Shown here one piece after another: positions 24,347 to 56,900 of a DNA stretch of 64,000 bases; within the stretch, counting starts at the first letter, position 1, and every line of letters begins with the position of its first letter. Position numbers and translations under genes: made by a program. The stretch is taken from contig NW_025767293.1 of NCBI RefSeq assembly GCF_003918875.1, positions 434,001-498,000 of the forward strand, in the 5' to 3' direction. This DNA is from Haliotis rubra. Lineage: Eukaryota. A model generated the notes under the pieces. It made no database searches. It worked only from the letters and a program-made list of their open reading frames with translations, and was not told the DNA's origin.

Positions 24347-26936
24347 TCATTTCTTTGTCACCACAGAACCCCTCTTAGCTGATTTTGCCCCAAATCTTTG
24401 GTTAGTCTTTCCTTCTGGAATGGCCGCAGATTGCCATCTCGTGGTCTCCTTTACACCGTAACGTATAGGCGGAAGTTCAGCTTGACTAGCACTGCTGCTG
24501 GTTACCGACCTGGAGGACCTGCCCACTCCACTCTGTGAGGCCCGGATGGGGGATGTTCTGGAGGACACAGCGGCTCTACTGTTGGACCGGATTAACGGAC
24601 TAGGGCCTCCCTGTGGTCTGGAAATGTTTTGATTAAGATGATCCAGAGTTCTTCTTGGAGGATTGGGACTCTTAGATTTAGGAGCTAAGATATAGGTACT
24701 CATGTTGATGTTGCTGGTTGGCTTAGATGGAGCAGCTTCCTCCTCCACGTCCTCCCTCGGCGTCTTCCCCTTCATGATGAGGTCCTTGATATCCTTCACG
24801 TCACTATGCATTTCTCTGTTCTGCTCCCGTAAGTTCCTCATCTCCTCATAGTTTTGATTCATGACCTCCCTCATCCTCTCTACCTCCTGTCTCATGGCCC
24901 TTGACGCCTTGTCCAGCTCCTCCTTGAAGTTCCTCGCCATCTCGTTCCTTTCCATTTCAAACTGTGCGAGTTTCATATTCTGCTGAGTGATGATGGTTTT
25001 GGCCCGTTCTAGTTCTTTCTCCATTATGGCACACTTGTTCTTCAGCTCTTTCAGCTCCTCGCGTAACGTCTGTATCTCGTTATTTTGTTCTTTATACAAA
25101 GTGTCTGATTCTAGGTGTCGTTTGTCGTCACGCAGCCTACTGACCTGTTTGAACAGCTTCCCAGCATACTCCTCAGTTTGTTTCACAAGTTTCTTGAGGT
25201 CATTCAATTCAAGTGATTTTTCCTTTATTATCCTATCTTTCTCACCAGTGCATTTGACCAACACGTTTATCCTGTCATCTCTGTTGACCAATGAGTCTTT
25301 TAATTCACCTATTTCCTCCTCCTTCTGTTCAACTTCTCGAGTCTTTTCTTTAACTATTCTTTCGTTTTCGGAGGCATGGTGCTTGGCCTCAACATCCAAC
25401 CTTAGCCTTAAGGCATCGATTTGTCCTTCAAGTGCCTTGTTCATGGTAATAACACTCTGCAACACGCTGAACGCCTCACCTGGCGCCATTTCCAGGGAAG
25501 CAGACGAAGGCCTTGACGAGGAAGCGGAAGTGACGTCAACACTACTTGCACTTCCATTATCACCTGCTCTTGATTCTGGTCGAGGGGTGATCCCGGTACC
25601 ATGAACCTTTAGGTGCTCCTGAAAGCGAAAAAGAAAACAGAATTCATCTGTTGATATATCTAAGTCAAACACCGGTACTCATTTTATCAATTTTGTTTGT
25701 TGTTTAATGCAAGACACAGCAATATTCAAGCTATAGGAAGGCAGCCAATAAGAATGGACCGGGTAATCCAGTGATTGACAATATGAATAACATTCTACTT
25801 GGCTCAACCAAGTCGCCTAGCCTGACCAACCAATGTATAATAAAATTGTTCTCTCCGACAGGCATTGGGAGCATTGGTCCATTTCTAACCCAGAATCGTG
25901 AACACGTGATCAGGTATTCCTCCGCTGGTGAAGACAGTAACATTAGGATCACCAAACACTTCTTTCAAATTTGACAAAACATCCTGTTTTTAAAAAAAAA
26001 TATTTGTGAAAAGCTGGAACTACGATCATGGATTTCATTTGAGGAAATGGTTTACTCCACAGTATCTGAGTAGTGAGCGAGTGTGTTTGTTAGTCGCTTT
26101 AGCAATATTCCAGCAATATCACGATTACCCGTGTGGGGAATCGAACCCGGGTCTTCAGCGTGACGAGCGAACGCGTTAACCACCAGGTTACCCCAACCGT
26201 CCCCACAGTATCTAGACAAGAAACGGGCTATTTTTATTTCAGCTGAAGTAAATTAATGCAAAAGGCTGACAACGACACGACCATGAGATATCCTGCTGAG
26301 TCAGCCACTCTTTCAATGCCCGATTTCCCAATCTGACTCCAGCCTCTTAAACACAAGGCAAGGTATAATCTCCTTTACGTCGTGACATGTATGTGTGGTC
26401 CCTGAGGAGGACCATTCCTCAATCACCGCCATTAAGTTTTCAGGACACGAACGCAGGATGTTACGGTTCCTATGTTTGTCCCAGTTATGATCCTTGGGTC
26501 TGTACCCGTGAAGATCCGGGTTAGAATAATTGATCTTCAGTAACCCATGCTTGTCGTAAGAGGCGACTAACGGAATTTGGTGGTCAGGCTCGCTGACTTG
26601 GTTGACACATGTCATTGTATCCCAAATGCGAATAGATCGATGCTCATGCTGTTGATCACTGGATTGTCTGGTCCAGACTCAATTATTTACAGACCGCCGC
26701 CATATAGCTGGAAAATTGCTGAGTGCGTCGTAAAACTAAACTCACTCACTCACATTTCGGCCTGTTTGCACTAACGTGTATGTGTGTGATATTTTGAGAG
26801 GCGTGGGTGTCCTCCCAGAATGGACTGGAGCGCCATGATACAACTTAAATAGTGTTGCATGGAGGATAAATGACTCAGTTACCTGGACAGAAAGCGTGTT
26901 ATCCATTCTCTGTGTTATCAAACCGCCAGACGCCAT
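24347..26936 (-). CDS. Uncharacterised coiled-coil protein, paralog 1 (~441 aa); exons 26883-26936 and 24347-25618
   Basis: 1272-nt open exon after a pyrimidine-rich CAG acceptor; upstream exon AAGATGGCG...MASGGLITQRMDNTLSVQ|GTAACT in matching phase 0; long heptad region with S/P/R-rich ends. Confidence 0.85.
26503..26752 (+). mobile_element. SINE-like family B, full length
   Basis: cccgtgaagatccgggttagaa...gtcgtaagaggcgactaa...gcgtcgtaaaactaaactcactcac. Confidence 0.9.
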
Positions 26937-30293: not shown

Positions 30294-30463
30294 CTGACTG
30301 ACTGACTGAGTTTAGTTTTACACCGCTTTTAGCAATATTCCAGCAATATCACGGCGGGGGACACCAGAAATGGGCTTAACACATTGTGGCCATGTGGGGA
30401 ATCGAACCCGGGTCTTCGGCGTGACGAGCCAACGCTTTAACCACTAGGCTACCCCACCGCCCC
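30294..30463 (-). mobile_element. SINE family A, full length
   Basis: Near-consensus copy, TTCATAAATTGA target-site duplication. Confidence 0.9.
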
Positions 30464-33400: not shown

Positions 33401-34926
33401 TGGACGCGTTAGCCACCATTACCGCCTACCCAGCACACTGGTGAAATCTCGCCGTGTGCAGCGTGTTGGGATCGAGGATCGAACCACGATAAGATTGTTG
33501 AGAAAATATATAAGTACGACTTCTTTTGTTAATCGTTGGAGTAATAATATCATATAAATTATGAAGACTAATGAATAATAATGCATTGAGGATAAATATA
33601 AAATTACCGATTTTTACTTATTACAACCCATACTGGCACAAGTTGTCCAACACTTTAGTTAAATGGTGTGTCTCTCAAGAAGGCGATTCCTTTACAACAT
33701 TCTGATTGTTAGGTCACACACAAATGAAAGTGATTATTGGGCTCCAGTTAAAGTTCAAAATATCAGGTCGCAGTACGCTTCTTGCTCCAACTACGCAACA
33801 CTAATTTACACTACACTACATTACAATGCATTACAATACAGTATATGCTGAAACGTTTTCCGTCGTGACAATAAAGAATAATCATATGAAACATGCTATC
33901 ATGATCACGTTTCCCAGAAGAAAGAAGTATTGGGTACTGTAGTTCTAAATACAATTGTAAATGTAAGTTTTTAATTAAAACAAAATGGAATGTTAAGCAA
34001 ACCATCATACAGTCATTATGTGGGTATATTTTGGGGCAATCCCCAATTCTTGCAAGGTCATTCCCACTGTTTCAAAGGTAAACGCTATTAAATCTTATGT
34101 TCCATATTTTTTTCTAAATGAAATAAAACGAATTTATCGTGACTTTGACAGTTGAGTATTAATACATTACTGCTACATTCCCTGAACAAGGTAACTGTTT
34201 CAAATGTACTCTACTGAGGGTTGGAATGGAAATTATATTCATGTTATTACAAACGTTTAGCATGATATTGGGGTCTGTGCAGAAATATCCACTGTAGCCA
34301 ATGAGCCCGTGTCTTCAATGTCGGGGAAACAAAGAAGAAACATTAAACCAGTATCAATTTAGTGGTACTGTGCTGCAGTAGATATGCAAACAAATGCAAT
34401 TTTAAAGTAATAATTGTTCCAGATGTAATAAAACGTGATGGTCAGCGTGCTGACAGTATTACCTATTACAATCTTTAACATTAATGATACCCATATTTTG
34501 TTAAATACAACTATCGTTTATGCTTTCAAAATTTTGCATTTTCGTAATTTCGATTAGTAGTTTTCTGAAAAATTAATCACAGCTACGAAAAAAGCTAATA
34601 ATTTAAAAGAAACTCGAAATTAAATTTTTCAAATATTTGAAATGCCAAGAAAATAATTTGGGTAGACTGCACTTTAATGGTCCCCGGAAGTTTACTCTAG
34701 CGAGGGTTAGGGTTATAGTTATGGGTTGGTAAGGGTTCGGGTTCGGGTAAAGTGCAGATGTCCCAATCATTTAAATTTCGTGATTATAGCTATAGCCGAA
34801 TGAACAAGAGAAAACACGAAATTTTCAGTAATAAAATATATAAATTATCTAAATATCTCATATTTACTCAATATGATTTTATGTGTTTTGGCAATACATG
34901 AAAGTTTTCATTTGAGTGATGTTGGT

Positions 34927-34942
34927 GGCCCTTAAAAGGGCC
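34927..34942 (-). terminator. Histone 3'-UTR stem-loop
   Basis: Minus strand reads aacGGCCCTTTTAAGGGCCaccaa, 35 nt after the stop codon, matching the metazoan consensus including flanks. Confidence 0.93.
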
Positions 34943-34977
34943 GTTGAAAAAGCCAGACAAGGGCACAGTAAATTACT

Positions 34978-35412
34978 TTACTTGACTTTCTTAGCAGATT
35001 TCGCTCTTCCTTTGGCAGCTTTCTTCATGGGTTTCTTTGCAGATTTCTTTGCTGCCTTTTTGGGAGACTTCTTCGCTGGCTTCTTTACAGCTTTCTTTGC
35101 TGACTTTTTGGCTGGCTTCTTTGCTGCTTTTTTAACAGCTTTCTTTGCTGGTTTCTTCGCCTTCTTGGCGGGTTTCTTGGCGGCGGACTTTGCCCTTTTT
35201 GCTGGTTTCGGCTTGCTTGAGGATCGGCCGCGAGAGGAACTCTTCTTTGGTGAAGCAGAGCGCTTTCTTTTCTGAGCTTTGCCGGGGCGCTTACTGATGG
35301 ATCGGGGCCTTTTAGGCGCAGGTAAACCGAGTTTGGCAGGAGACTTCGATCGGGATCGGGATCGGGATCGAGATCGGGATCGAGAACGCGACATTCTGGT
35401 CGGGCTGTTCAT
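34978..35412 (-). CDS. Protamine-like / histone H1-tail-like basic protein (144 aa), no winged-helix domain; probable sperm nuclear basic protein
   Basis: MNSPTRM(SR)8SKSPAK...SPKK...(KKPAKK/KKAAKK)n; first true ATG is 35412 (the ORF-track start is GTG); intronless, histone-type promoter and stem-loop. Confidence 0.88.
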   Translation of the reverse strand: MNSPTRMSRSRSRSRSRSRSRSKSPAKLGLPAPKRPRSISKRPGKAQKRKRSASPKKSSSRGRSSSKPKPAKRAKSAAKKPAKKAKKPAKKAVKKAAKKPAKKSAKKAVKKPAKKSPKKAAKKSAKKPMKKAAKGRAKSAKKVK

Positions 35413-35470
35413 TTCGAAGATGTACACACTTTGCAGTCTGCAGAACGTGACAGGAGTGACGTGATGGCAG

Positions 35471-35571
35471 TTACGTCATATTTATAGGCATCGCGCGGAC
35501 CTGATAGAAGACAAGCAACACATGTGACGCGAAGACAAGAATGGCGTTACAAGTATGGCCTTACTGTGTTT
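35471..35571 (-). promoter_or_regulatory. Histone H1-type promoter: H1 box AAACACA (35565-35571), H4-box-like TCAGGTCCGC (35495-35504), TATAAATA (35479-35486), CRE-like TGACGTAA (35471-35478)
   Basis: Motifs read directly on the minus strand in the order and spacing known for H1 genes. Confidence 0.75.
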
Positions 35572-36759
35572 GTTGACATATTTGAATCAATGTAATCGTA
35601 TTTGTAAAGCATGTAAAGTACATATAAATAGTAACACGTCACAGAGAGATCTATTAGAATCAGGAAATTTCATATATTCAATCAATAGCAGCCAAATTCT
35701 GAAGTTTGTGTCTCATAATGTATGCGTAAACACTCGCTGGAGATCTTCGCAGTAACAAAATACCTACATTTTACGACATTATTCACCACAAATCTGATCT
35801 ACTTATATATTATGAACACATTATAACTGGGCACCAATAAACACGATGACCCGTTTGTTCATAAATAAACACTGATCAATATATGTGTCTGCAATTGTGC
35901 ACTGGCGCACAGCGGAAACAATCAGCCATTTTGAAAGTCGGTAGTACTGAAGCGGTCGTTGTTGGCACGGGTACTACAGTTGATGTTAATGTATGGCACT
36001 TACGACTATCTTAGCTCTAAAAGAGTTTCGAAAATCTAGGCCCAGCTAGCCAAAATCTAAATACAGAAACGTACCCTAGGACGGGTCCATTCTGCATTGT
36101 GACGTTTTACTTGATCGGAACTCAAACTGTTGTATTCTAGATGTTGATTGCGTTATAAGAAACGAGCAAACAAATACTTCGCGATGCACTGGCAATCAGT
36201 TGAACAGGAATAACTGGACATACGGTTTCGGTTTTGGGTTGCATCATATGGAGTCGTCCGCCATTTAGGTTGATTTTGTTTAGGGTACAGCCATTTCTGT
36301 TTACAGATAGTTTACACCATGTCCTGAAAGGTGTGTACCCACTGTGGGGGATTCAGAGATTTCAGTAACACATGCTTGTTGTAAGGGACGACGAGATATA
36401 TGGATCATCAGGGTGTCATAGCATTTCATCTCTTCCTAACTGTTTGAGACATTCATAATATCAGTTTCTGGATTGTCTGATCCAGATTCGTTCACAGGCT
36501 GGAACTGAGGTTAATTGTTTTTTTGGTTTGTTGTTGAATAAATAATTTAAAAATAAATAAATAAACCTTATTTCCTTAATGTCGTAATTAAATTAGATCT
36601 CATAAATTACGACTTGAGTTTTCCACGTTTTTGGCCTAAACTTTGAGGTTAATATTGTTCTGTTTAGTGATCTAAACGCGATTTTTTGATGTACCATGTA
36701 TAAAGTTCTTTCAATTAAAATATATAACTGGTTCGTGTTTTGTAACATTATTGTTTTAT

Positions 36760-39537: not shown

Positions 39538-41921
39538 TTAAACCATGTTTTTCTTCTTGTGAATATTGGTACGTTTTGAATCCTTGCTCAAAACCGGAAG
39601 TGTTGGTTTGAAAGCCATGTGCCCATGTTCTTTAGGAGTCGTTTGCTCATGTTGACTCGGGGGTTCTTTCTGAGAGATCTTCTGTGGTTCATTGACTGTT
39701 TCTGACGCTTTCGTAGTACTTTGTTCCACCAACATGTCTCTGATCTGTTTTATGTCACTTCGCATAGACTCGTTCTGTTCTCGCAAATCCTTCATCTCTC
39801 GCCACTGGCTTCTCATCAAGTCTCGCATTTTACCGATTTCAAGTCTCATGTTCTGCGAGATTTTATTCAGTTCCTCTCTGAACTGAACCTGAGCGTTTTT
39901 ACTTTCTTTCTCCAACAACCTGACCTTTCCGCCATGTTGAGATATCACTTCCTTAGCCTTTACCAATTCCTTTTCGAATCGGGAAAGATTCTTCCGCAGA
40001 TACCCGATCTCCCTGTGTAGTCCCTTAATTTCGTCCTCCTTCTCTTGATAAGCAGAACCAGTCTGGAGCTTCCCTTTGTCTCTCTGAAGTTTCGATACCT
40101 CGGACTCAAGTTCATCTGTATATACTCTAGTATCCTCTACATCCCTACGTAGATCTTCAATCTGACGCTGTATCTCCTCAATCTCTTTATTCTGTCTGTC
40201 GTTATTGTCTGTCAAATGAGACAATACTGCAGTTTTCTTCTGTATCTTAGATTTCAGATTCGAGAGCTCAGCGTTTTTTGTTCCAGCTGCGCATCTGTTT
40301 CCTTGACGATAGCAATCCTCTGTTCGTTGTTGTGTTTGTAGTCCACCTCCAGACGGAGACGAAGAGCGTCTATCTGTTGCACGAGAGCCTTGTTAATAGC
40401 GACAACCTGACTCATGGCGTCATTTCCGCTAGCCTCGTTCTTGGTTTCAGAACTTCCATCAGATGAAGTGTCTAGTGACGAGGAGGTATGAGAAATTGTC
40501 GCAGCTGATGTAGGTCTTCCGTTCCCGGGGTTGTCGCTACCTTCGACGTACATGGACTTGCTTCTCGTCTGCATGGATGGGCCTTTAACGTTGAAAGGCG
40601 ACTTGTCACCCTGAAGATGGACATGGTGTTAGTTAAAACGATAGCATATATAGTACATAGATAATATATTATTGGTCAATATCTTTACTTCGTTCGTTTG
40701 GGTTTTTTTTCTTTAACAGATCTGCAATCAGCAATATTATCGTGTCTGGACCAGATAATCCAGTGATTTGATATTGTGAGCAACGATCACCATGCGGGGT
40801 AGGATGACATTCTATCAATCAAGTGATCATCTGACCACCGAATCCCCTTGTGTGACCTGTGGGGGACAGTTCTAACCCGGAATCTCCAAAGAGAACGGGT
40901 TTTTTTGTTCAGATCGATGAAATGGAACGGAAATGAGGACGGGCAAGTCAAAACATTGATTACACAACAGTCTCTTTTCCTGTTGACTGGGTTCCGTCCT
41001 ATTGCGCAACTTAGTACAATAACCAGTCCAGAATTTTGAGACCAATTCATTTAGCTGGATACATATATATATATATAAGTCAGTATTTTTTTTATACATC
41101 TAAGCAAATGTACACCCCAACACTATGCTCCTTATACTCCTTCCAAACAGAAACCTGGAAATCGTGGAAATCTGAAAACGAGGCTCTACCGCTAGAAACG
41201 TTTGGCGGTCTGGTACGAACTTGATATTATATCAATCACAATGTGCGTTACAGAACTACACTGAATAAGCGCAAGAAACACATAACAGGTGTGACCAGTG
41301 AGCCAGATGCATTGTGAATCATTTTACGACCATACCAAACTGGGGCAGTCTGTGACGTCTTAGTTAAGGTCATGCTGCCTACACCTCGCCATAAAATTTA
41401 GAAATACGATGTTATTAAAGTTTAAAATTAGAATTCATTTTTAAATACCATTTTCTTATGAAACAAGGAAGTGGAATTCAGTGTAACCATAGTTGTTTGT
41501 GATGTCTATTTTCACTTTCACACGAGAAAATTCGGATCGGCTGAAAAGTAGGTCATTGTCTGAATAGGTTAATGAGACTCATGTTTCGGTTTGAAGGGGA
41601 CGGGGGATCACGAAACAAAAATAGGGGGTATCTGGGATTCAAGTCCGTGTTCAGAGGAACCTTGCAGGACGAAGATTCGAAGGAGATGCGTACTTGTCCC
41701 TGTTGAATATTTTTCACACACCCGTACTTACAGGACAATTTGAAACAAAAACATTTCATGCAAAACATCTAAATTCCTTGACGTACGCTTGTCCAGCCAA
41801 AATTGGATGCCAGAAAATTGCCCCTGACATCAGTTAAATCAGCAGTCAAAACATGTGTTGATACAAATAGCGACGAAGACATAACGCGGCAATTTACACA
41901 TACCTCTGAATAGGACGCCAT
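39538..41921 (-). CDS. Uncharacterised coiled-coil protein, paralog 2 (~363 aa once a 1-nt frameshift at 40274-40279 is corrected); exons 41904-41921 and 39538-40610
   Basis: NKALVQQIDALRLRLEVDYKH and EKELVKAK..FREEL..MR.E...MKDLREQNESMRSDIKQIRDML align with paralog 1; AACATGGCG MASYSE|GTATGT exon in phase 0; adding one A to the A6 run joins the two ORFs. Confidence 0.8.
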
Positions 41922-49051: not shown

Positions 49052-50715
49052 CTAATAGTCAAACTGTTGGTCAATGTCACCAACATATTCACAAATATCA
49101 TCATATCCAAGTTTCAAAATGATGTCTCTGTCACTTAGCAGCTGCAGTAAAGCTTCACATTTTTCTTTGCTTCTTTTCACAACTTCCCCCTATTTGCCCC
49201 TTGTACTTTCCAGACACAATCAAAGCATGTGCATGATCATGTTTGGGAATCACAGTCTCCAGACTTGATTGTGACAGTCCCTCCAGTACTCGCCCTTCCT
49301 CAGTCCGACATACACAGTTATCTACACTGACAACGTCCACCACTATAACTTTTGACTTGTAATATTTGCCACTCTTAAACTTTTTGTCAACAATCCGAAC
49401 CCTAATGTCTGGTCTTGCCCACAGGTACACATCATTTGCATTGTACCCATTTTCTTGTTTAGCCTTTTTATCCTCTGGCAAATAACTTGAACTTCTTTTG
49501 ACAGAATTAGTTTCATCGTCTGACAAATCCCCGACTGGACTTGTGTTTCCTTTTTCTGTCATGTTCAGTGTGTTTTGAGCGTTCAATAACTGGACTTGAG
49601 TATCGATCATGTTTACTATGATCAGCATGTTTTCTGTCATCATGTGGACTTCTACTGTGACCCCTGTGAGATTTCTTTCTTCTGCTTTTTTCATGGGGAC
49701 TTCTGCTTCTAGATCTATGTTTGTCTTTTTTCTTCTTTTCCTCTTCCTTCTTATACTTATCAACTTTTCCCTTATTGAGATATTTTGAAAACTTTTCATA
49801 ATCTTTCTTTGACACCAATTCAACAGAATACTGGGAAATTGTCACAATTTTTCCACTGAGCGTTAATTTCACCATAATCCTTGCATTGTCATCATCTAAA
49901 CCTTCAATAACTCCATACATATCTCTACTAGTACCTTTAGTTATTAAACAAAAGGCACCCTTCTTCAACTCTAATTCATCTTCTTTATCATGGCCCTTTT
50001 CAGATACAGCACCATTTTTCATTTGTAAGTTTGTACTTCTATCTGCACCAAGTCCAAGTCCTTTAGGTCTTAAAATTGCTTCTGGAGGTGGAACAAGTTC
50101 CTTATTTTTACCAATACCTTCACCATCCTTCCAGCCCATACCTCTGAGCATTGCAAAGCCAAACTGGTCTATTGGTATTTGTTCGTAGTCAGCATCTTCT
50201 GGGCCATCCGGCCTCAGTGACACATCCAGTTTATCATCAGTTTCGAAACCTTCGGGAACCTTATTACGAACAAGTAAAGGAACACTTAAATTTGGATCGG
50301 GCTGCCCGCGGCCAGTCCAGTTCTGATTTTCAAGTGCACTCGCTTCAATAATTTCTCTTGTCGCCTGCTCTGTTAGAGTCAAGTCTTCTTTCACTACTTT
50401 GGGTTCTGTATCGTCTTTGCTGTCGACTGAGTTTGTCTTATCACTTTCTTCCTTTAGCTGGTCTTTCTTCTCCAAGAACGGAGTCCTCCAGTTATTGCTC
50501 TTTATCAACGGAATAACAAATTGTTTCGGGGCTGTATCGGTTGGTTTTGAGCTTTTGACTTCCTTACCCTCGAACGAGTACACAAAATCCGTTTCTTCTT
50601 CCTTTTTCTTTTCTGAATCGCTGACGACAGATGTTTGTAATTTTTTGTTGTCAATTTTCTTGGCAAAACCAAAAGAAAACCCTCCCTTCTTCGCGTTTGT
50701 TTCGTCGTCCGCCAT
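49052..50715 (-). CDS. GPKOW: G-patch domain and KOW motifs-containing protein (Spp2/MOS2 homologue), intronless, ~553 aa after correcting two 1-nt insertions (49529-49532, 49186-49190)
   Basis: FSFGF N-terminus, VIPLIKSNNW, G-patch DYEQIPIDQFGFAMLRGMGWKDGEGIGK..RPKGLGLGAD, KOW1, WARPDIRVRIVDKKFKSGKYYKSK..VCRTEEGRVLEG..LETVIPK, and in a third frame EVVKRSKEKCEALLQL...LGYDDICEYVG. Confidence 0.93.
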
Positions 50716-51616: not shown

Positions 51617-51769
51617 NNNNNNNNNNNNNNNNNNNNNNNNNNNNNNNNNNNNNNNNNNNNNNNNNNNNNNNNNNNNNNNNNNNNNNNNNNNNNNNNNNNN
51701 NNNNNNNNNNNNNNNNNNNNNNNNNNNNNNNNNNNNNNNNNNNNNNNNNNNNNNNNNNNNNNNNNNNNN
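51617..51769. other. Assembly gap (N run)
   Basis: 153 N. Confidence 1.
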
Positions 51770-53941: not shown

Positions 53942-56900
53942 ATGGCGGACTCGGTTGCAGGTAGGTTTGCCGGGAAAAAAGTTGAGAAATCAGATGATAA
54001 CAACAATAAAATCAAGGCATGCATGTTACAGATTAATATTGTAATAAGGAAATTCCAAGAAACTATGTATAACTGCAAAACATATCTTCGCAATCACAAA
54101 TAGAGCTTTCGATACTGAAACAAGTGCTCACTCAAAAATCTCGTGCATCCAACTTGATCAAGATTTTGGTTGTCAAAAAAGAGGACTATCTCGGTCGAAT
54201 CGTAACGGTAAATAACTGTAATTTTGCCACCAGTTAATGTCAAACTGAATACATTAGGAGGGGATAGATTGGACGGATTGTCAGTGTAGTATCTGTGCAA
54301 ATATTGATGTTGGAAGATGTTGCCTATCTGACAATGCATGGAATCTAAAATAAAGCGGTTTGGGAATGTGATCGTACCTCAGCAATCGATTCTCCAATCT
54401 CAATATTTCACTATGAAGGCACCAGTAATGTTTTCTTTTCATATGTACTTGTAATCAAGATGCCAAACAAAATACATACCCGAATACGCCTTTGGCCATG
54501 TCACTACAAATTGAACTAGTTTTTCAGGCAGATTCCTATATAAAATCTTCTATTTCCTAATCATAGACATATCAGTTGTGCACATGACTTGGTGAATTTC
54601 TTCTTTCTTTAGTTACTTCGTGATAAACAGTTTTGTTAATGTGACCTAATGGGGATGTACTTTGTGGCAGAAATATGCATTCTATATTTCCTTATATGTG
54701 AATAAAGAGTATGATTTCCATTTAAAACACAAAACTGGAAGCAGTTTCATGCATCTGCCATGTTATTTTACTCAGAACTTCACCTCCATTTTACAAATGT
54801 ATGTTATCTACAGTAATGTTGTGGTTGCAACATTATTATGTGAAATTGCTGTAGTTTATACTTGCCAACAAACGATCAGATAGGACAAAGTGGCCACAGG
54901 ACACTCTGATAACGATGTTTCATACTTGAAAAATACTTCTGAGCAACCTTTTGTTTCAGTGAATCTCATTTCACCATCAGAAGGAAATGAAATAAGTTTG
55001 TACCCTATCTTTTCACTGAGATTGTTAATGGGATTACTTTATGAATTTGGGGCGGTGGGGTAGCCTAGTGGTTATAGCGTCCGCTCGTCAGGCGGAAGAC
55101 TGAGTTTAGTTTTACGCCGCTTTTAGCAATATTCCAGCAATATCACGGCGGGGTACAATGGGCTTCACACATTGTGCCCATGTGGAGAATTGAACCCGGG
55201 TCTTCGGCGTGACGAGCCAACGCTTGAACCACTAGGCTACCCAACTGCCCCTCAGGCGGAAGAACCGGGTTCGATTCCCCATATGGGTACAATGTGTGAA
55301 GCCCATTTCTGGTGTCCCCTGCCGTGACATTGCTGGAATATTGCTAAAAGCGGTGTAAAACTAAGCTCACTCACTTTATGAATTATTTATGTGTATTCAA
55401 GAATTCACCGGTTTCCTTCAGCAACTTTGCACTATCACTGTAACATATGTTACAATTGTAATTATGCTTTCTTTGTATCATAATAATTCTTGTAGTTTTT
55501 GTATTATATTCGGATGAATACCAAACCTAATCACCAGCACAGCCACCTCTCGACCTTCCATGAAATGATAGGGGCGGTGAGGTAGCCTAATGGTTAAAGC
55601 GTTGGCTCGTCACGCCGAAGACTCGGGTTCGAATCCCCACATGGGTACAATATGTGAAGCCCATTTCTGGTGTCCCCCGCCGTGATGTTGCTGGAATATT
55701 GCTTAAAGCGGCGTAAAACCAAACTCAGTCAGTCAGTCAGTCCATGAAATGATAGCTTGACAACTGGTAGCCTGAATCATATACTCCTCCAATAAGGGTA
55801 AAATGGAATGATTCTCATGGCTGGAAGCTGTAGCAGGCATTGTGTATTCATGCATTATCACCAGCTTATGATGTTTTCTTAATTAACAGAAATGAGTGAT
55901 TTCTAAGCATGTCCATCATATTCCAAAAACGGATTGTAACAGCTTCATTGATGCTGATACCATGACTCTTGAAGCAAGCTGTGACCCCATTACACACTGT
56001 GATCTTAATGCTGCGATTGTCATTAGTTTATATTGAGTTTATAGTTGTATGTGATTACGATTGTCATGTAGATATTGGCAAAAACTTAGATTACAATTGA
56101 AACTGACTTTTGCTCCTGACTTAGCTCAATGTTGGCCTCTAAGCAGGTATAGATAAATTCCTCCCACTAGAATTTCTTATGGTCAGCTTGTATTAGTCCA
56201 TATACTGAGACTTGTCTACTGACAGTTAATGGTGGTCTAATTAATGGAAATAATCGAAGATTGACTAATTGAGCAATCAATCATGTTTTCTCATAATTGA
56301 ACGCAAACAATTTTGGAACACTTGTTTGCATTAACAATATTTTTCACAAGGTTGGTTTTGTCTGTTACATTTCATAAGCACTACAAGCTTGTTCCAAGTC
56401 ATGATTGAATTTATCTTAAAGACTAGGAAATTTATGTTCCTAACATACTAGTCATACTTTAAAGATGTGAAATTTGCAAATGCATTTTGTGCAATTTGAA
56501 AATAAAATGCGGAAGAACTACATGTTTTTACTATATTTTTTTGTGCATTAAGAAACATAACCAGCAAAATTTAATAAATGAAGCTAACCAATTATTTTCG
56601 ATGGTTGCTCTGTTGCAATGAAACAACCATCACTTATGAGGTTTTAACCAATTCCCAACACTCCTGACAGTAATGCCAAAGTACAACTCCATGGTTTGGG
56701 CACACACTGTGATGATAATGCAGTCACAGCTGCTTCATTATTTTCCAAGTGAAAACAATTATCAGGATATGGTAATGGTGTTCATTACACATACACATTA
56801 CACATAGTTGTTTACACTAGAGGCAATTCTGTTGTTTGTAGATGTGAAATACAGAAGTCTAAATTAGGAAAACAACCATTTCTTTTCTTATTTTTAAAAT

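What the first reader, a model, noticed from the sequence alone, without database searches (positions are those of the whole stretch)
34927..35571. H1-derived gene with no globular domain that keeps the full histone-gene regulatory cassette
Seen: intronless 144-aa ORF made only of an (SR)8 N-terminus, SPKK/SPAK motifs and K/A/P-rich H1-tail-like repeats; upstream H1 box, H4-box-like GGTCCG and TATA; downstream a perfect histone stem-loop; no other histone gene in these 64 kb. Established: mollusc protamine-like sperm proteins derive from H1 and carry SR repeats; the stem-loop/SLBP/U7 pathway is essentially restricted to histone mRNAs. Inference: a solitary sperm nuclear basic protein gene showing the H1-to-protamine transition while still using histone-type 3' processing, i.e. 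a non-canonical SLBP target.
Basis: partly seen in the sequence, partly recalled or inferred. Interest (0 to 1): 0.8.

Follow-up and report, generated by a model that had tools for sequence, protein, structure and literature searches.

The report
Abalone tail-only H1-like gene with histone 3' end
Abalone (Haliotis) genomes carry a conserved, intronless gene for a very basic, disordered protein that resembles a linker-histone tail without its folded domain. It keeps the 3' stem-loop signal of histone mRNAs, which makes it a good but untested candidate for a sperm DNA-packing protein.

Summary
On the minus strand, ATG 35412 to stop 34978 encodes a 144-aa protein. It has 32% K, 12% R, 17% S, 17% A and 10% P, with no acidic, aromatic or Cys residues. 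Pfam finds no domain. A histone 3' stem-loop (Rfam RF00032, 36.9 bits, cut-off 34) lies 35 nt after the stop.

The window is Haliotis rubra. Syntenic single-copy orthologues in H. asinina and H. rufescens keep the ORF. All indels are in frame, and dN/dS is about 0.1-0.3. They also keep about 540 nt of promoter and a stem-loop above the Rfam cut-off. The 96 nt after the stop are 90-94% identical, while outer flanks cannot be aligned. No AATAAA follows within 600 nt in any of the three species. Contigs from a separate sequencing run tile the ORF colinearly, so no winged-helix segment was lost in assembly.

Three parts of the interpretation are not shown:
- Descent from H1. Exhaustive HMMER found only compositional hits, and the H1-box match is weak on its own.
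- Expression in testis or sperm.
- Transcripts that actually end at the stem-loop. No RNA data were reachable.

Verdict: a real, selected gene that most likely uses histone-type 3' processing. It is a plausible protamine-like sperm protein. Moderately interesting.

The parts
35713..35950 (-). Far-upstream conserved block, about -540 to -300 from the first ATG. Function unknown.
   Evidence: Aligns across H. rubra, H. asinina and H. rufescens, while sequence further out does not.
35565..35571 (-). H1-box-like heptamer AAACACA, about 110 nt upstream of the predicted start site.
   Evidence: Invariant in three species. The heptamer occurs 32 times in the window, so the motif alone is weak evidence.
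35489..35501 (-). GC-rich element GGTCCGCGCGATG (H4-box-like) next to the TATA box.
   Evidence: GTCCGCGCGATG is invariant. The first G is specific to H. rubra; the other two species have C.
35479..35486 (-). TATA box TATAAATA.
   Evidence: Invariant in three species.
35471..35478 (-). CRE-like octamer TGACGTAA directly after the TATA box.
   Evidence: Invariant in three species. Its function is not tested.
35453..35459 (-). Initiator-like TCACTCC. The predicted start site is the A at 35457, giving a 5' UTR of about 45 nt.
   Evidence: It is the only match to YYANWYY 20-40 nt after the TATA, at 29 nt. The other two species read TTACTCC and TCACTCT, which also fit YYANWYY by eye. The start site itself is inferred.
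34978..35412 (-). Intronless coding sequence: 144 aa plus the stop codon.
   Evidence: Orthologous ORFs. dN/dS 0.08-0.18 over the whole ORF and 0-0.32 in the core. All indels are multiples of 3. The first six codons (MNSPTR) differ from H. rufescens only by 3 synonymous changes, so the upstream ATG is probably the real start.
35347..35391 (-). Ser-Arg repeat, residues 8-22: (SR)7 followed by S.
   Evidence: The repeat number varies in frame between species.
35191..35346 (-). Conserved non-repetitive basic core, residues 23-74, containing SPAK and SPKK.
   Evidence: Identical protein in H. asinina, with 8 synonymous and 0 non-synonymous changes.
34981..35190 (-). K/A/P-rich tetrapeptide-repeat tail, residues 75-144. 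It resembles the C-terminal tail of H1 and contains one SPKK.
   Evidence: 12-nt periodic repeat family D1. It is the only part that draws database hits, and those are compositional.
34943..34977 (-). Short 3' UTR (35 nt) between the stop codon and the stem-loop.
   Evidence: It is part of the 96 nt that are 90-94% identical between species.
34927..34942 (-). Histone-type stem-loop GGCCCU-UUUA-AGGGCC: 6-bp stem and 4-nt loop.
   Evidence: Rfam RF00032, 36.9 bits against a cut-off of 34. Orthologues score 35.7 and 37.9 bits. Only loop position 4 varies: A here, U in the other two.
34904..34926 (-). ACCA cleavage context followed by the purine-rich element CAAAUGAAAAC (candidate histone downstream element).
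   Evidence: Aligns to the Rfam consensus 3' flank. Nearly invariant in three species, and conservation collapses about 45 nt after the stem.

Best explanation
This is a functional, single-copy Haliotis gene. It makes a short mRNA, predicted at about 535 nt, from a TATA/Inr promoter. The 3' end is most likely formed by the histone pathway: SLBP binds the stem-loop, and U7-guided cleavage follows the ACCA. Polyadenylation is probably not involved.

The product is a fully disordered polycation of three parts. First comes an N-terminal Ser-Arg repeat, then a conserved basic core with S-P-X-K sites, then an H1-tail-like AKKP repeat array. It has no winged-helix domain.

The most likely role is a protamine-like chromatin-condensing protein of the male germ line. 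Its DNA binding would be held back by phosphorylation of the SR and SPKK sites until late spermiogenesis, as in sea-urchin sperm H1 and H2B.

Shown here: gene structure, selection, lack of a folded domain, and conservation of the stem-loop cassette.

Inferred: SLBP/U7 use, H1 ancestry, germ-line expression and control by phosphorylation.
For: - ORF and composition. No Pfam domain. The ESM Atlas model has pLDDT 0.41 and pTM 0.08.
- Stem-loop above the Rfam cut-off in three species, 31-35 nt after the stop on the coding strand.
- The 96 nt after the stop are 90-94% identical in every species pair. The promoter is 77-93% identical and the outer flanks about 45-53%.
- The conserved island is bounded at about -540 and about +530 from the first ATG.
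- No AATAAA within 600 nt downstream in any species.
- dN/dS 0.08-0.32, and indels only in frame.
- A separate run tiles the locus colinearly.
- K+R is 43.8% with K/R 2.7, rich in S and A. This falls in the protamine-like compositional range as I know it.
- The organism is a mollusc, Haliotis rubra. Mollusc sperm proteins of this kind are traced to H1 (PMC5550673). A related archaeogastropod has a 106-aa sperm protamine (Daban 1995, as cited in PMC12216123).
Against: - There is no expression evidence of any kind. No RNA run held the locus. The exact products are on record only in genome assemblies.
- No detectable homology to H1 or to known protamine-like proteins.
- The H1-box heptamer is common in this window, and the GGTCC core is not conserved.
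- A stem-loop usually implies S-phase-coupled expression. That fits spermatogonia, but also embryos or any dividing tissue.
- The protein evolves under purifying selection, whereas many sperm basic proteins evolve fast.
- In the separate run, contigs show single-base deletions at homopolymers (34932, 35196, 35310) at depth 2.6-6. These are probably errors, but I could not resolve them.
Confidence: 0.55

Rival explanations
1. It is a replication-coupled or embryonic/germ-line linker-like chromatin protein, not a sperm-specific one. This would be a tail-only H1 analogue made in S phase in dividing cells, cleavage embryos or primordial germ cells.
For: The stem-loop cassette is the hallmark of replication-dependent expression. 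In oyster, a protamine-like gene annotated PHI-2B/PHI-3 is broadly expressed in early embryos and peaks in primordial germ cells (PMC12551290). Strong purifying selection is more typical of housekeeping chromatin proteins.
Against: SR repeats combined with SPKK motifs are typical of sperm basic proteins. The gene is solitary rather than part of a histone repeat, with no other stem-loop in the window. No expression data exist either way.
Confidence: 0.25
2. It is a polycationic protein with a non-chromatin role. Examples are a molluscidin-like antimicrobial polypeptide rich in dibasic repeats, or an RNA-binding or nucleolar SR/K-rich protein.
For: There are 16 KK dipeptides and no signal peptide. 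This is like the molluscidins described from oyster and abalone gill, which also lack a signal peptide and pro-region (PMC5577615). The SR repeat resembles RS domains.
Against: By my recollection, published molluscidins are about 46-55 aa with their own short ORFs; PMC5577615 says only 'short'. This protein is 144 aa. Pfam finds no RRM or other domain. A histone-type promoter and 3' end point to chromatin.
Confidence: 0.1
3. It is a decayed H1 gene remnant, or an assembly artefact that lost the winged-helix segment.
For: It is tail-like only, and the gene callers used by the databases give it no name or domain.
Against: The ORF is intact in three species with only in-frame indels and dN/dS well below 1. 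Three independent assemblies give the same short gene. Contigs from a separate run tile the ORF with no insertion.
Confidence: 0.03

Closest known systems
Bivalve protamine-like sperm proteins without a globular domain (Mytilus PL-III and PL-IV)
   Same: Mollusc proteins that are lysine- and arginine-rich with abundant Ser and Ala, unstructured, and regarded as H1 descendants (PMC5550673). The genes sit in solitary positions.
   Different: No sequence similarity was detectable here. The sperm location of the Haliotis protein is untested. I could not read the primary gene paper (Eirin-Lopez et al. 2006, Mol Biol Evol 23:1304; not held). I therefore do not know whether the Mytilus genes carry a stem-loop, a poly(A) signal, or both.
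Sea-urchin sperm-specific H1 and H2B
   Same: SPKK-type motifs in basic tails. By my knowledge, the genes have histone-type 3' ends and are expressed in replicating male germ cells, and tail phosphorylation delays tight DNA binding.
   Different: Those proteins keep the histone fold or winged helix. This one has no folded domain.
Canonical replication-dependent linker histone H1 genes
   Same: Intronless, with short UTRs. There is an AAACACA motif about 110 nt upstream, a TATA box, a stem-loop plus purine-rich element, and a K/A/P-rich tail with S/TPXK sites.
   Different: The defining globular domain (PF00538) is absent. The gene is not in a histone cluster. The N-terminal SR repeat is not a feature of H1.
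Protamine of the archaeogastropod Monodonta turbinata (106 aa; Daban et al. 1995, as cited in PMC12216123)
   Same: A large sperm basic protein from the same broad gastropod group, and of similar length.
   Different: It is described as a true arginine-rich protamine, whereas this protein is lysine-dominated (K/R 2.7). I could not obtain its sequence to compare.
Mussel 'orphon' H1 genes
   Same: Solitary H1-type genes outside the main histone repeats.
   Different: They are reported to carry a polyadenylation signal (as recounted in PMC6210712), and they encode a full H1. Here there is no AATAAA within 600 nt and no globular domain.

Membership tests
Genes with a histone-type (SLBP/U7) mRNA 3' end | A 6-bp stem and 4-nt loop matching the histone stem-loop model, with its flanks | tested here: met
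   RF00032 scores 36.9 bits (cut-off 34) over model positions 1-46. Orthologues score 35.7 and 37.9 bits.
Genes with a histone-type (SLBP/U7) mRNA 3' end | The stem-loop lies shortly after the stop codon on the coding strand, and the gene has no intron | tested here: met
   35 nt after the stop. The ORF is continuous in three species.
Genes with a histone-type (SLBP/U7) mRNA 3' end | A purine-rich downstream element that pairs with U7 snRNA | tested here: inconclusive
   CAAAUGAAAAC (CAAAAGAAAAC in H. rufescens) starts 12 nt after the stem and is conserved. No Haliotis U7 sequence was available to test pairing.
Genes with a histone-type (SLBP/U7) mRNA 3' end | No competing poly(A) signal | tested here: met
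   No AATAAA within 600 nt in three species. There is a non-conserved ATTAAA at +248 in H. rubra and +317 in H. asinina, and none in H. rufescens.
Genes with a histone-type (SLBP/U7) mRNA 3' end | Transcripts end 4-5 nt after the stem and are not polyadenylated | not testable with these tools
No RNA run held the locus.
Linker histone H1 | Winged-helix globular domain (Pfam Linker_histone) | tested here: not met
   0 Pfam families at E<=10. No globular-domain motifs in six frames.
Linker histone H1 | Detectable sequence homology to H1 proteins | tested here: not met
   Exhaustive phmmer gave 7 hits at E<=1e-3. All are compositional matches to residues 71-142 in unrelated proteins.
Linker histone H1 | H1-type promoter (H1 box about 100 nt upstream, proximal box, TATA) | tested here: inconclusive
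   The motifs are present and conserved. However, the heptamer is frequent by chance, and no Haliotis H1 promoter was available for comparison.
Protamine-like (PL-type) sperm nuclear basic proteins | Composition: about 35-50% K+R with both residues present, rich in Ser and Ala | tested here: met
   K+R 43.8%, K/R 2.7, S 17%, A 17%. The threshold is from my knowledge of the classification.
Protamine-like (PL-type) sperm nuclear basic proteins | Made in testis and present in sperm nuclei | not testable with these tools
   No RNA or protein data could be reached.
True protamines (P type) | Arginine-dominated composition with arginine clusters | tested here: not met
   R is 11.8% and K is 31.9%.
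SR splicing proteins | RNA-recognition motif plus an RS domain | tested here: not met
   There is an SR repeat only, with no RRM or any other Pfam domain.

The most novel reading that the evidence does not exclude
The abalone gene would be a living intermediate of the H1-to-protamine route. It would be a sperm chromatin protein that has lost every folded histone domain, yet its mRNA is still made and controlled purely by the SLBP/U7 stem-loop pathway. This would extend that pathway's clients beyond proteins with a histone fold or winged helix. It would also give a tractable case in which the regulatory cassette outlived the protein domain.
Probability: 0.35. Interest if true: 0.7.

Novelty: new variant of a known kind. 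Interest (0 to 1): 0.55.

Why it matters
The derivation of sperm basic proteins from histone H1 is argued mostly from protein composition and a few bivalve and tunicate genes. Here the protein part is reduced to a tail-like polycation, while the histone-type promoter layout and 3' processing signal remain under the strongest constraint in the locus. If expression confirms a germ-line role, the ancestry argument would rest on regulatory DNA rather than on low-complexity protein similarity.

It would also name the main candidate for abalone sperm chromatin packaging. That is useful for abalone breeding and cryopreservation work. It would add a domain-less client to the stem-loop pathway as well.

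A practical point follows. Such a gene is nearly invisible to poly(A)-selected RNA-seq and to homology-based annotation. This may explain why the databases I could query show it only as an unnamed, domain-less 129-138 aa call.

Tried and rejected
- Word-index protein search with the 144-aa protein was swamped by low-complexity candidates, with one irrelevant hit.
- Exhaustive phmmer returned only compositional matches, such as bacterial response-regulator tails.
- PDB sequence search found nothing meaningful.
- ESM Atlas feature and structure searches gave noise-level scores below 0.8. The nearest named family is the bacterial H1-like HC2.
- Exact-sequence cluster look-ups found the 144-aa and 138-aa products and both orthologues absent.
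- Look-ups for contigs encoding the exact products returned genome assemblies only, with no transcript contigs.
- Sequencing-run search found no RNA holder. Runs from organisms B and C laid only on two short high-copy repeats, despite word shares of 0.27-0.43, which I could not explain.
- The key bivalve gene paper, a JBC minireview and a PNAS paper (tried under a PMC number recalled from memory) were not held. Full-text searches found no open paper describing a protamine-like gene with a histone stem-loop. None covered abalone sperm basic proteins either.
- The antisense 119-aa ORF (34916-35275, +) is rejected. It is the Phe/Ala/Leu-rich mirror of the lysine codons, and the TATA box, stem-loop orientation and selection all fit the minus strand.
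- A mobile-element origin was considered, because earlier notes report histone-type stem-loops on Polinton-like ends in this genome. It is rejected for this locus: there are no terminal repeats around it, and it sits at the same syntenic place in three species.

Operator notes: the N run at 51617-51769 was left untouched.

Full report
**What is there.** The feature lies on the minus strand. An intronless ORF runs from ATG 35412 to TAA 34980-34978 and encodes 144 aa. The protein has 46 K, 25 S, 25 A, 17 R and 15 P. It has no acidic, aromatic or cysteine residue, a pI near 12 and a mass of 15.6 kDa.

The protein has three parts:
- Residues 1-22 hold SPTR and a Ser-Arg repeat.
- Residues 23-74 form a non-repetitive basic core with SPAK and SPKK.
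- Residues 75-144 form a 12-nt-periodic array of AKKP/AKKA-type tetrapeptides with one more SPKK.

Pfam finds nothing at E<=10, so there is no linker-histone domain. The PDB sequence search finds nothing either. The ESM Atlas model of this protein is disordered, with pLDDT 0.41 and pTM 0.08.

**The 3' end.** Rfam's Histone3 model (RF00032) matches 34947-34902 on the minus strand at 36.9 bits against a cut-off of 34. The E-value is 3.8e-7 for the whole window, and it is the only such hit in 64 kb. The alignment covers all 46 model positions. It shows the flank CAAC, the stem GGCCCU/AGGGCC, the loop UUUA, then ACCAACAU and an A-rich stretch. The stem starts 35 nt after the stop codon. On the coding strand the only poly(A)-like hexamer within 600 nt downstream is an ATTAAA 248 nt after the stem. 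It lies inside an interspersed repeat.

**The 5' side.** Reading upstream from the ATG on the minus strand:
- an initiator-like TCACTCC with its A at 35457
- TGACGTAA at 35478-35471
- TATAAATA at 35486-35479, 29 nt from the initiator A
- GGTCCG at 35501-35496
- AAACACA at 35571-35565

These elements predict an mRNA of about 535 nt with UTRs of about 45 and 56 nt. That is the size and layout of a histone message. The start site and the cleavage site are both inferred.

**Organism.** A neighbouring 400-aa exon (49516-50715, minus) is a G-patch/KOW protein. It is 100% identical to the NCBI protein of Haliotis rubra, 92% to H. asinina and 87% to H. cracherodii. The exact 138-aa product starting at the second Met is on record only in the H. 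rubra assembly GCA_003918875.1, contig QXJH01000592.1.

**Orthologues.** The coiled-coil gene just upstream (39541-40224, minus) led to its H. asinina and H. rufescens orthologues and to 20-kb loci around them. In both loci, a single-exon gene with no Pfam hit sits 3-5 kb downstream of the coiled-coil gene. These are L002 15056-15463 (135 aa as called) and L003 16595-16984 (129 aa as called). Both translate to clear orthologues. tblastn identity over the full length is 89% and 76%.

Each orthologue is followed, 31 nt after its stop, by a Histone3 hit above the cut-off, at 35.7 and 37.9 bits. No second copy exists in the window or in any fetched locus.

**Selection on the ORF.**
- All gaps in the ORF alignment are multiples of three.
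- dN/dS over the whole ORF is 0.08-0.18.
- In the unambiguous core (residues 23-74), H. rubra and H. asinina differ by 8 synonymous and 0 non-synonymous changes. The two comparisons with H. rufescens give 0.32 and 0.125.
- The six codons before the Met used by the gene callers (MNSPTR) are kept in all three species. H. rufescens differs there by three changes, all synonymous.

**Selection on the non-coding parts.** A 1.07-kb island is conserved, from about -540 to about +530 relative to the first ATG. Outside it the three loci cannot be aligned. Within the island, the 96 nt after the stop (3' UTR, stem-loop, ACCA, purine-rich element) are 90-94% identical in every pair. The proximal 300 nt of promoter are 77-93% identical, and the outer flanks 45-53%.

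The stem is invariant. Only the fourth loop base differs: A in H. rubra and U in the others. By my knowledge, that is the unconstrained loop position. Conservation stops about 45 nt after the stem. None of the three species has AATAAA in the next 600 nt. This is the pattern expected if the stem-loop and the downstream element together form the working 3' end signal.

**Is the missing globular domain an assembly artefact?** No. Three independent assemblies give equally short genes. Contigs of a separate run (X1, about 6x depth) tile 34683-35962 colinearly with no insertion.

That run shows an in-frame 3-nt deletion at 35021. It also shows single-base deletions at homopolymers (34932, 35196, 35310) at depth 2.6-6, and two G>T changes. 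I read the single-base deletions as low-depth errors, but I could not settle it.

**What is not shown.**
- Ancestry. The exhaustive phmmer search of 1.84 billion representatives returned seven hits at E<=1e-3. All lie on residues 71-142, in unrelated proteins such as bacterial response regulators with AKKPAKK tails. Nothing matches the N-terminal half. 'H1-derived' therefore rests on tail-like composition, the promoter motifs and the 3' cassette.
- Promoter motifs. AAACACA occurs 32 times in this window against 23.8 expected. A second copy sits just downstream of the gene. The GGTCC core of the 'H4 box' has its first G only in H. rubra. The motifs are conserved and well placed, but so is the whole promoter.
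- Expression. The exact products were on record only in genome assemblies.
- Processing. No U7 sequence was available.

**Interpretation.** I take it as settled that this is a real, selected, single-copy gene for a disordered polycation. A histone-type 3' end is very likely.

The best functional reading is a protamine-like germ-line chromatin protein. Its composition falls in that class. SR and SPKK motifs are typical of sperm basic proteins. Mollusc sperm proteins are traced to H1 (PMC5550673), and a related archaeogastropod has a large sperm protamine (PMC12216123).

The stem-loop suggests synthesis in replicating germ cells, with phosphorylation delaying tight DNA binding, as in sea-urchin sperm histones (from my knowledge).

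The main rival is a replication-coupled or embryonic/germ-line linker-like protein. In oyster, a protamine-like gene is highly expressed in early embryos and primordial germ cells (PMC12551290). A molluscidin-like antimicrobial role (PMC5577615) is a distant third. A pseudogene or assembly artefact is contradicted.

**Novelty.** The open literature I could search holds no description of a protamine-like gene with a histone stem-loop. It holds none of abalone sperm basic proteins either. The primary paper on the Mytilus PL-III and PL-II/PL-IV genes was not available. It may already report the 3' signals of those genes.

I therefore rate this as a new variant of a known kind, with that reservation. 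Earlier notes of this scan report histone-type stem-loops on Polinton-like element ends elsewhere in this genome. I did not test them. This locus has no terminal repeats and is syntenic in three species.

Noticed in passing
window 34660-34699 and 35940-35979: Two short stretches flanking the conserved island are high-copy repeats. Contigs of runs from three organism labels pile up only there, with summed depth from about 70 to about 7,000. They are probably ends of interspersed (SINE-like) elements. They mark the outer limits of the conserved block.
   Followed up: partly
window 35394 versus 35412 (minus strand): The gene calls on record for the H. rubra, H. asinina and H. rufescens assemblies all start this gene at the second Met (138, 135 and 129 aa). 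The upstream ATG and the six codons after it are conserved with only synonymous changes. The products are probably six residues longer than called.
   Followed up: yes
window 35471-35478 (minus strand): A CRE-like TGACGTAA directly abuts the TATA box and is invariant in three species. CGTCA half-sites lie at 35529-35525 and 35461-35457. In mammals, CRE/CREM sites drive post-meiotic protamine genes (from my knowledge). This is speculative here.
   Followed up: no
window 34981-35190 (minus strand), reading frame +1: Shifting the lysine-rich tail by one base reads as an Arg/Gln-rich peptide (RNPPRRRRNQQRK...), though it is interrupted by stops. This recalls the frameshift route from Lys-rich to Arg-rich sperm proteins proposed for tunicates (from my knowledge).
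   Followed up: partly
window 24350-25672 and 39541-40224 (minus strand): The two coiled-coil ORFs that bracket the gene are paralogues, 36.7% identical over 158 aa with E 1e-28. The upstream one is conserved in position in H. asinina and H. rufescens and carries a CCDC39-type Pfam hit. The downstream neighbours there are called genes of 448 and 456 aa that run off the loci, so orthology of that side was not verified.
   Followed up: partly
window 35713-35950 (minus strand): A far-upstream block of about 240 nt is conserved as strongly as the proximal promoter. It includes an AAAATGGCTG motif and has no convincing ORF. It may be an enhancer or part of a divergent promoter.
   Followed up: no
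window 30387-30458 (-) and 55582-55640 (+): Two weak tRNA-model hits just above the Rfam cut-off (33.5 and 33.1 bits). These are likely tRNA-derived SINE heads rather than tRNA genes.
   Followed up: no
window 49155-50715 (minus strand) and the N run at 51617-51769: This is the G-patch/KOW gene that identifies the species. The matching NCBI H. rubra protein is flagged LOW QUALITY PROTEIN. An assembly gap lies about 0.9 kb upstream of it and was left untouched.
   Followed up: no
runs X4-X10 (organisms B and C): The run index gave word shares of 0.22-0.43 for the 1.1-kb query in the runs of organisms B and C (X4-X10). Of these, X4 and X7 were laid, and their contigs fell only on the two flanking repeats. 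The tool's filters may have dropped the gene-bearing contigs. Unexplained.
   Followed up: no
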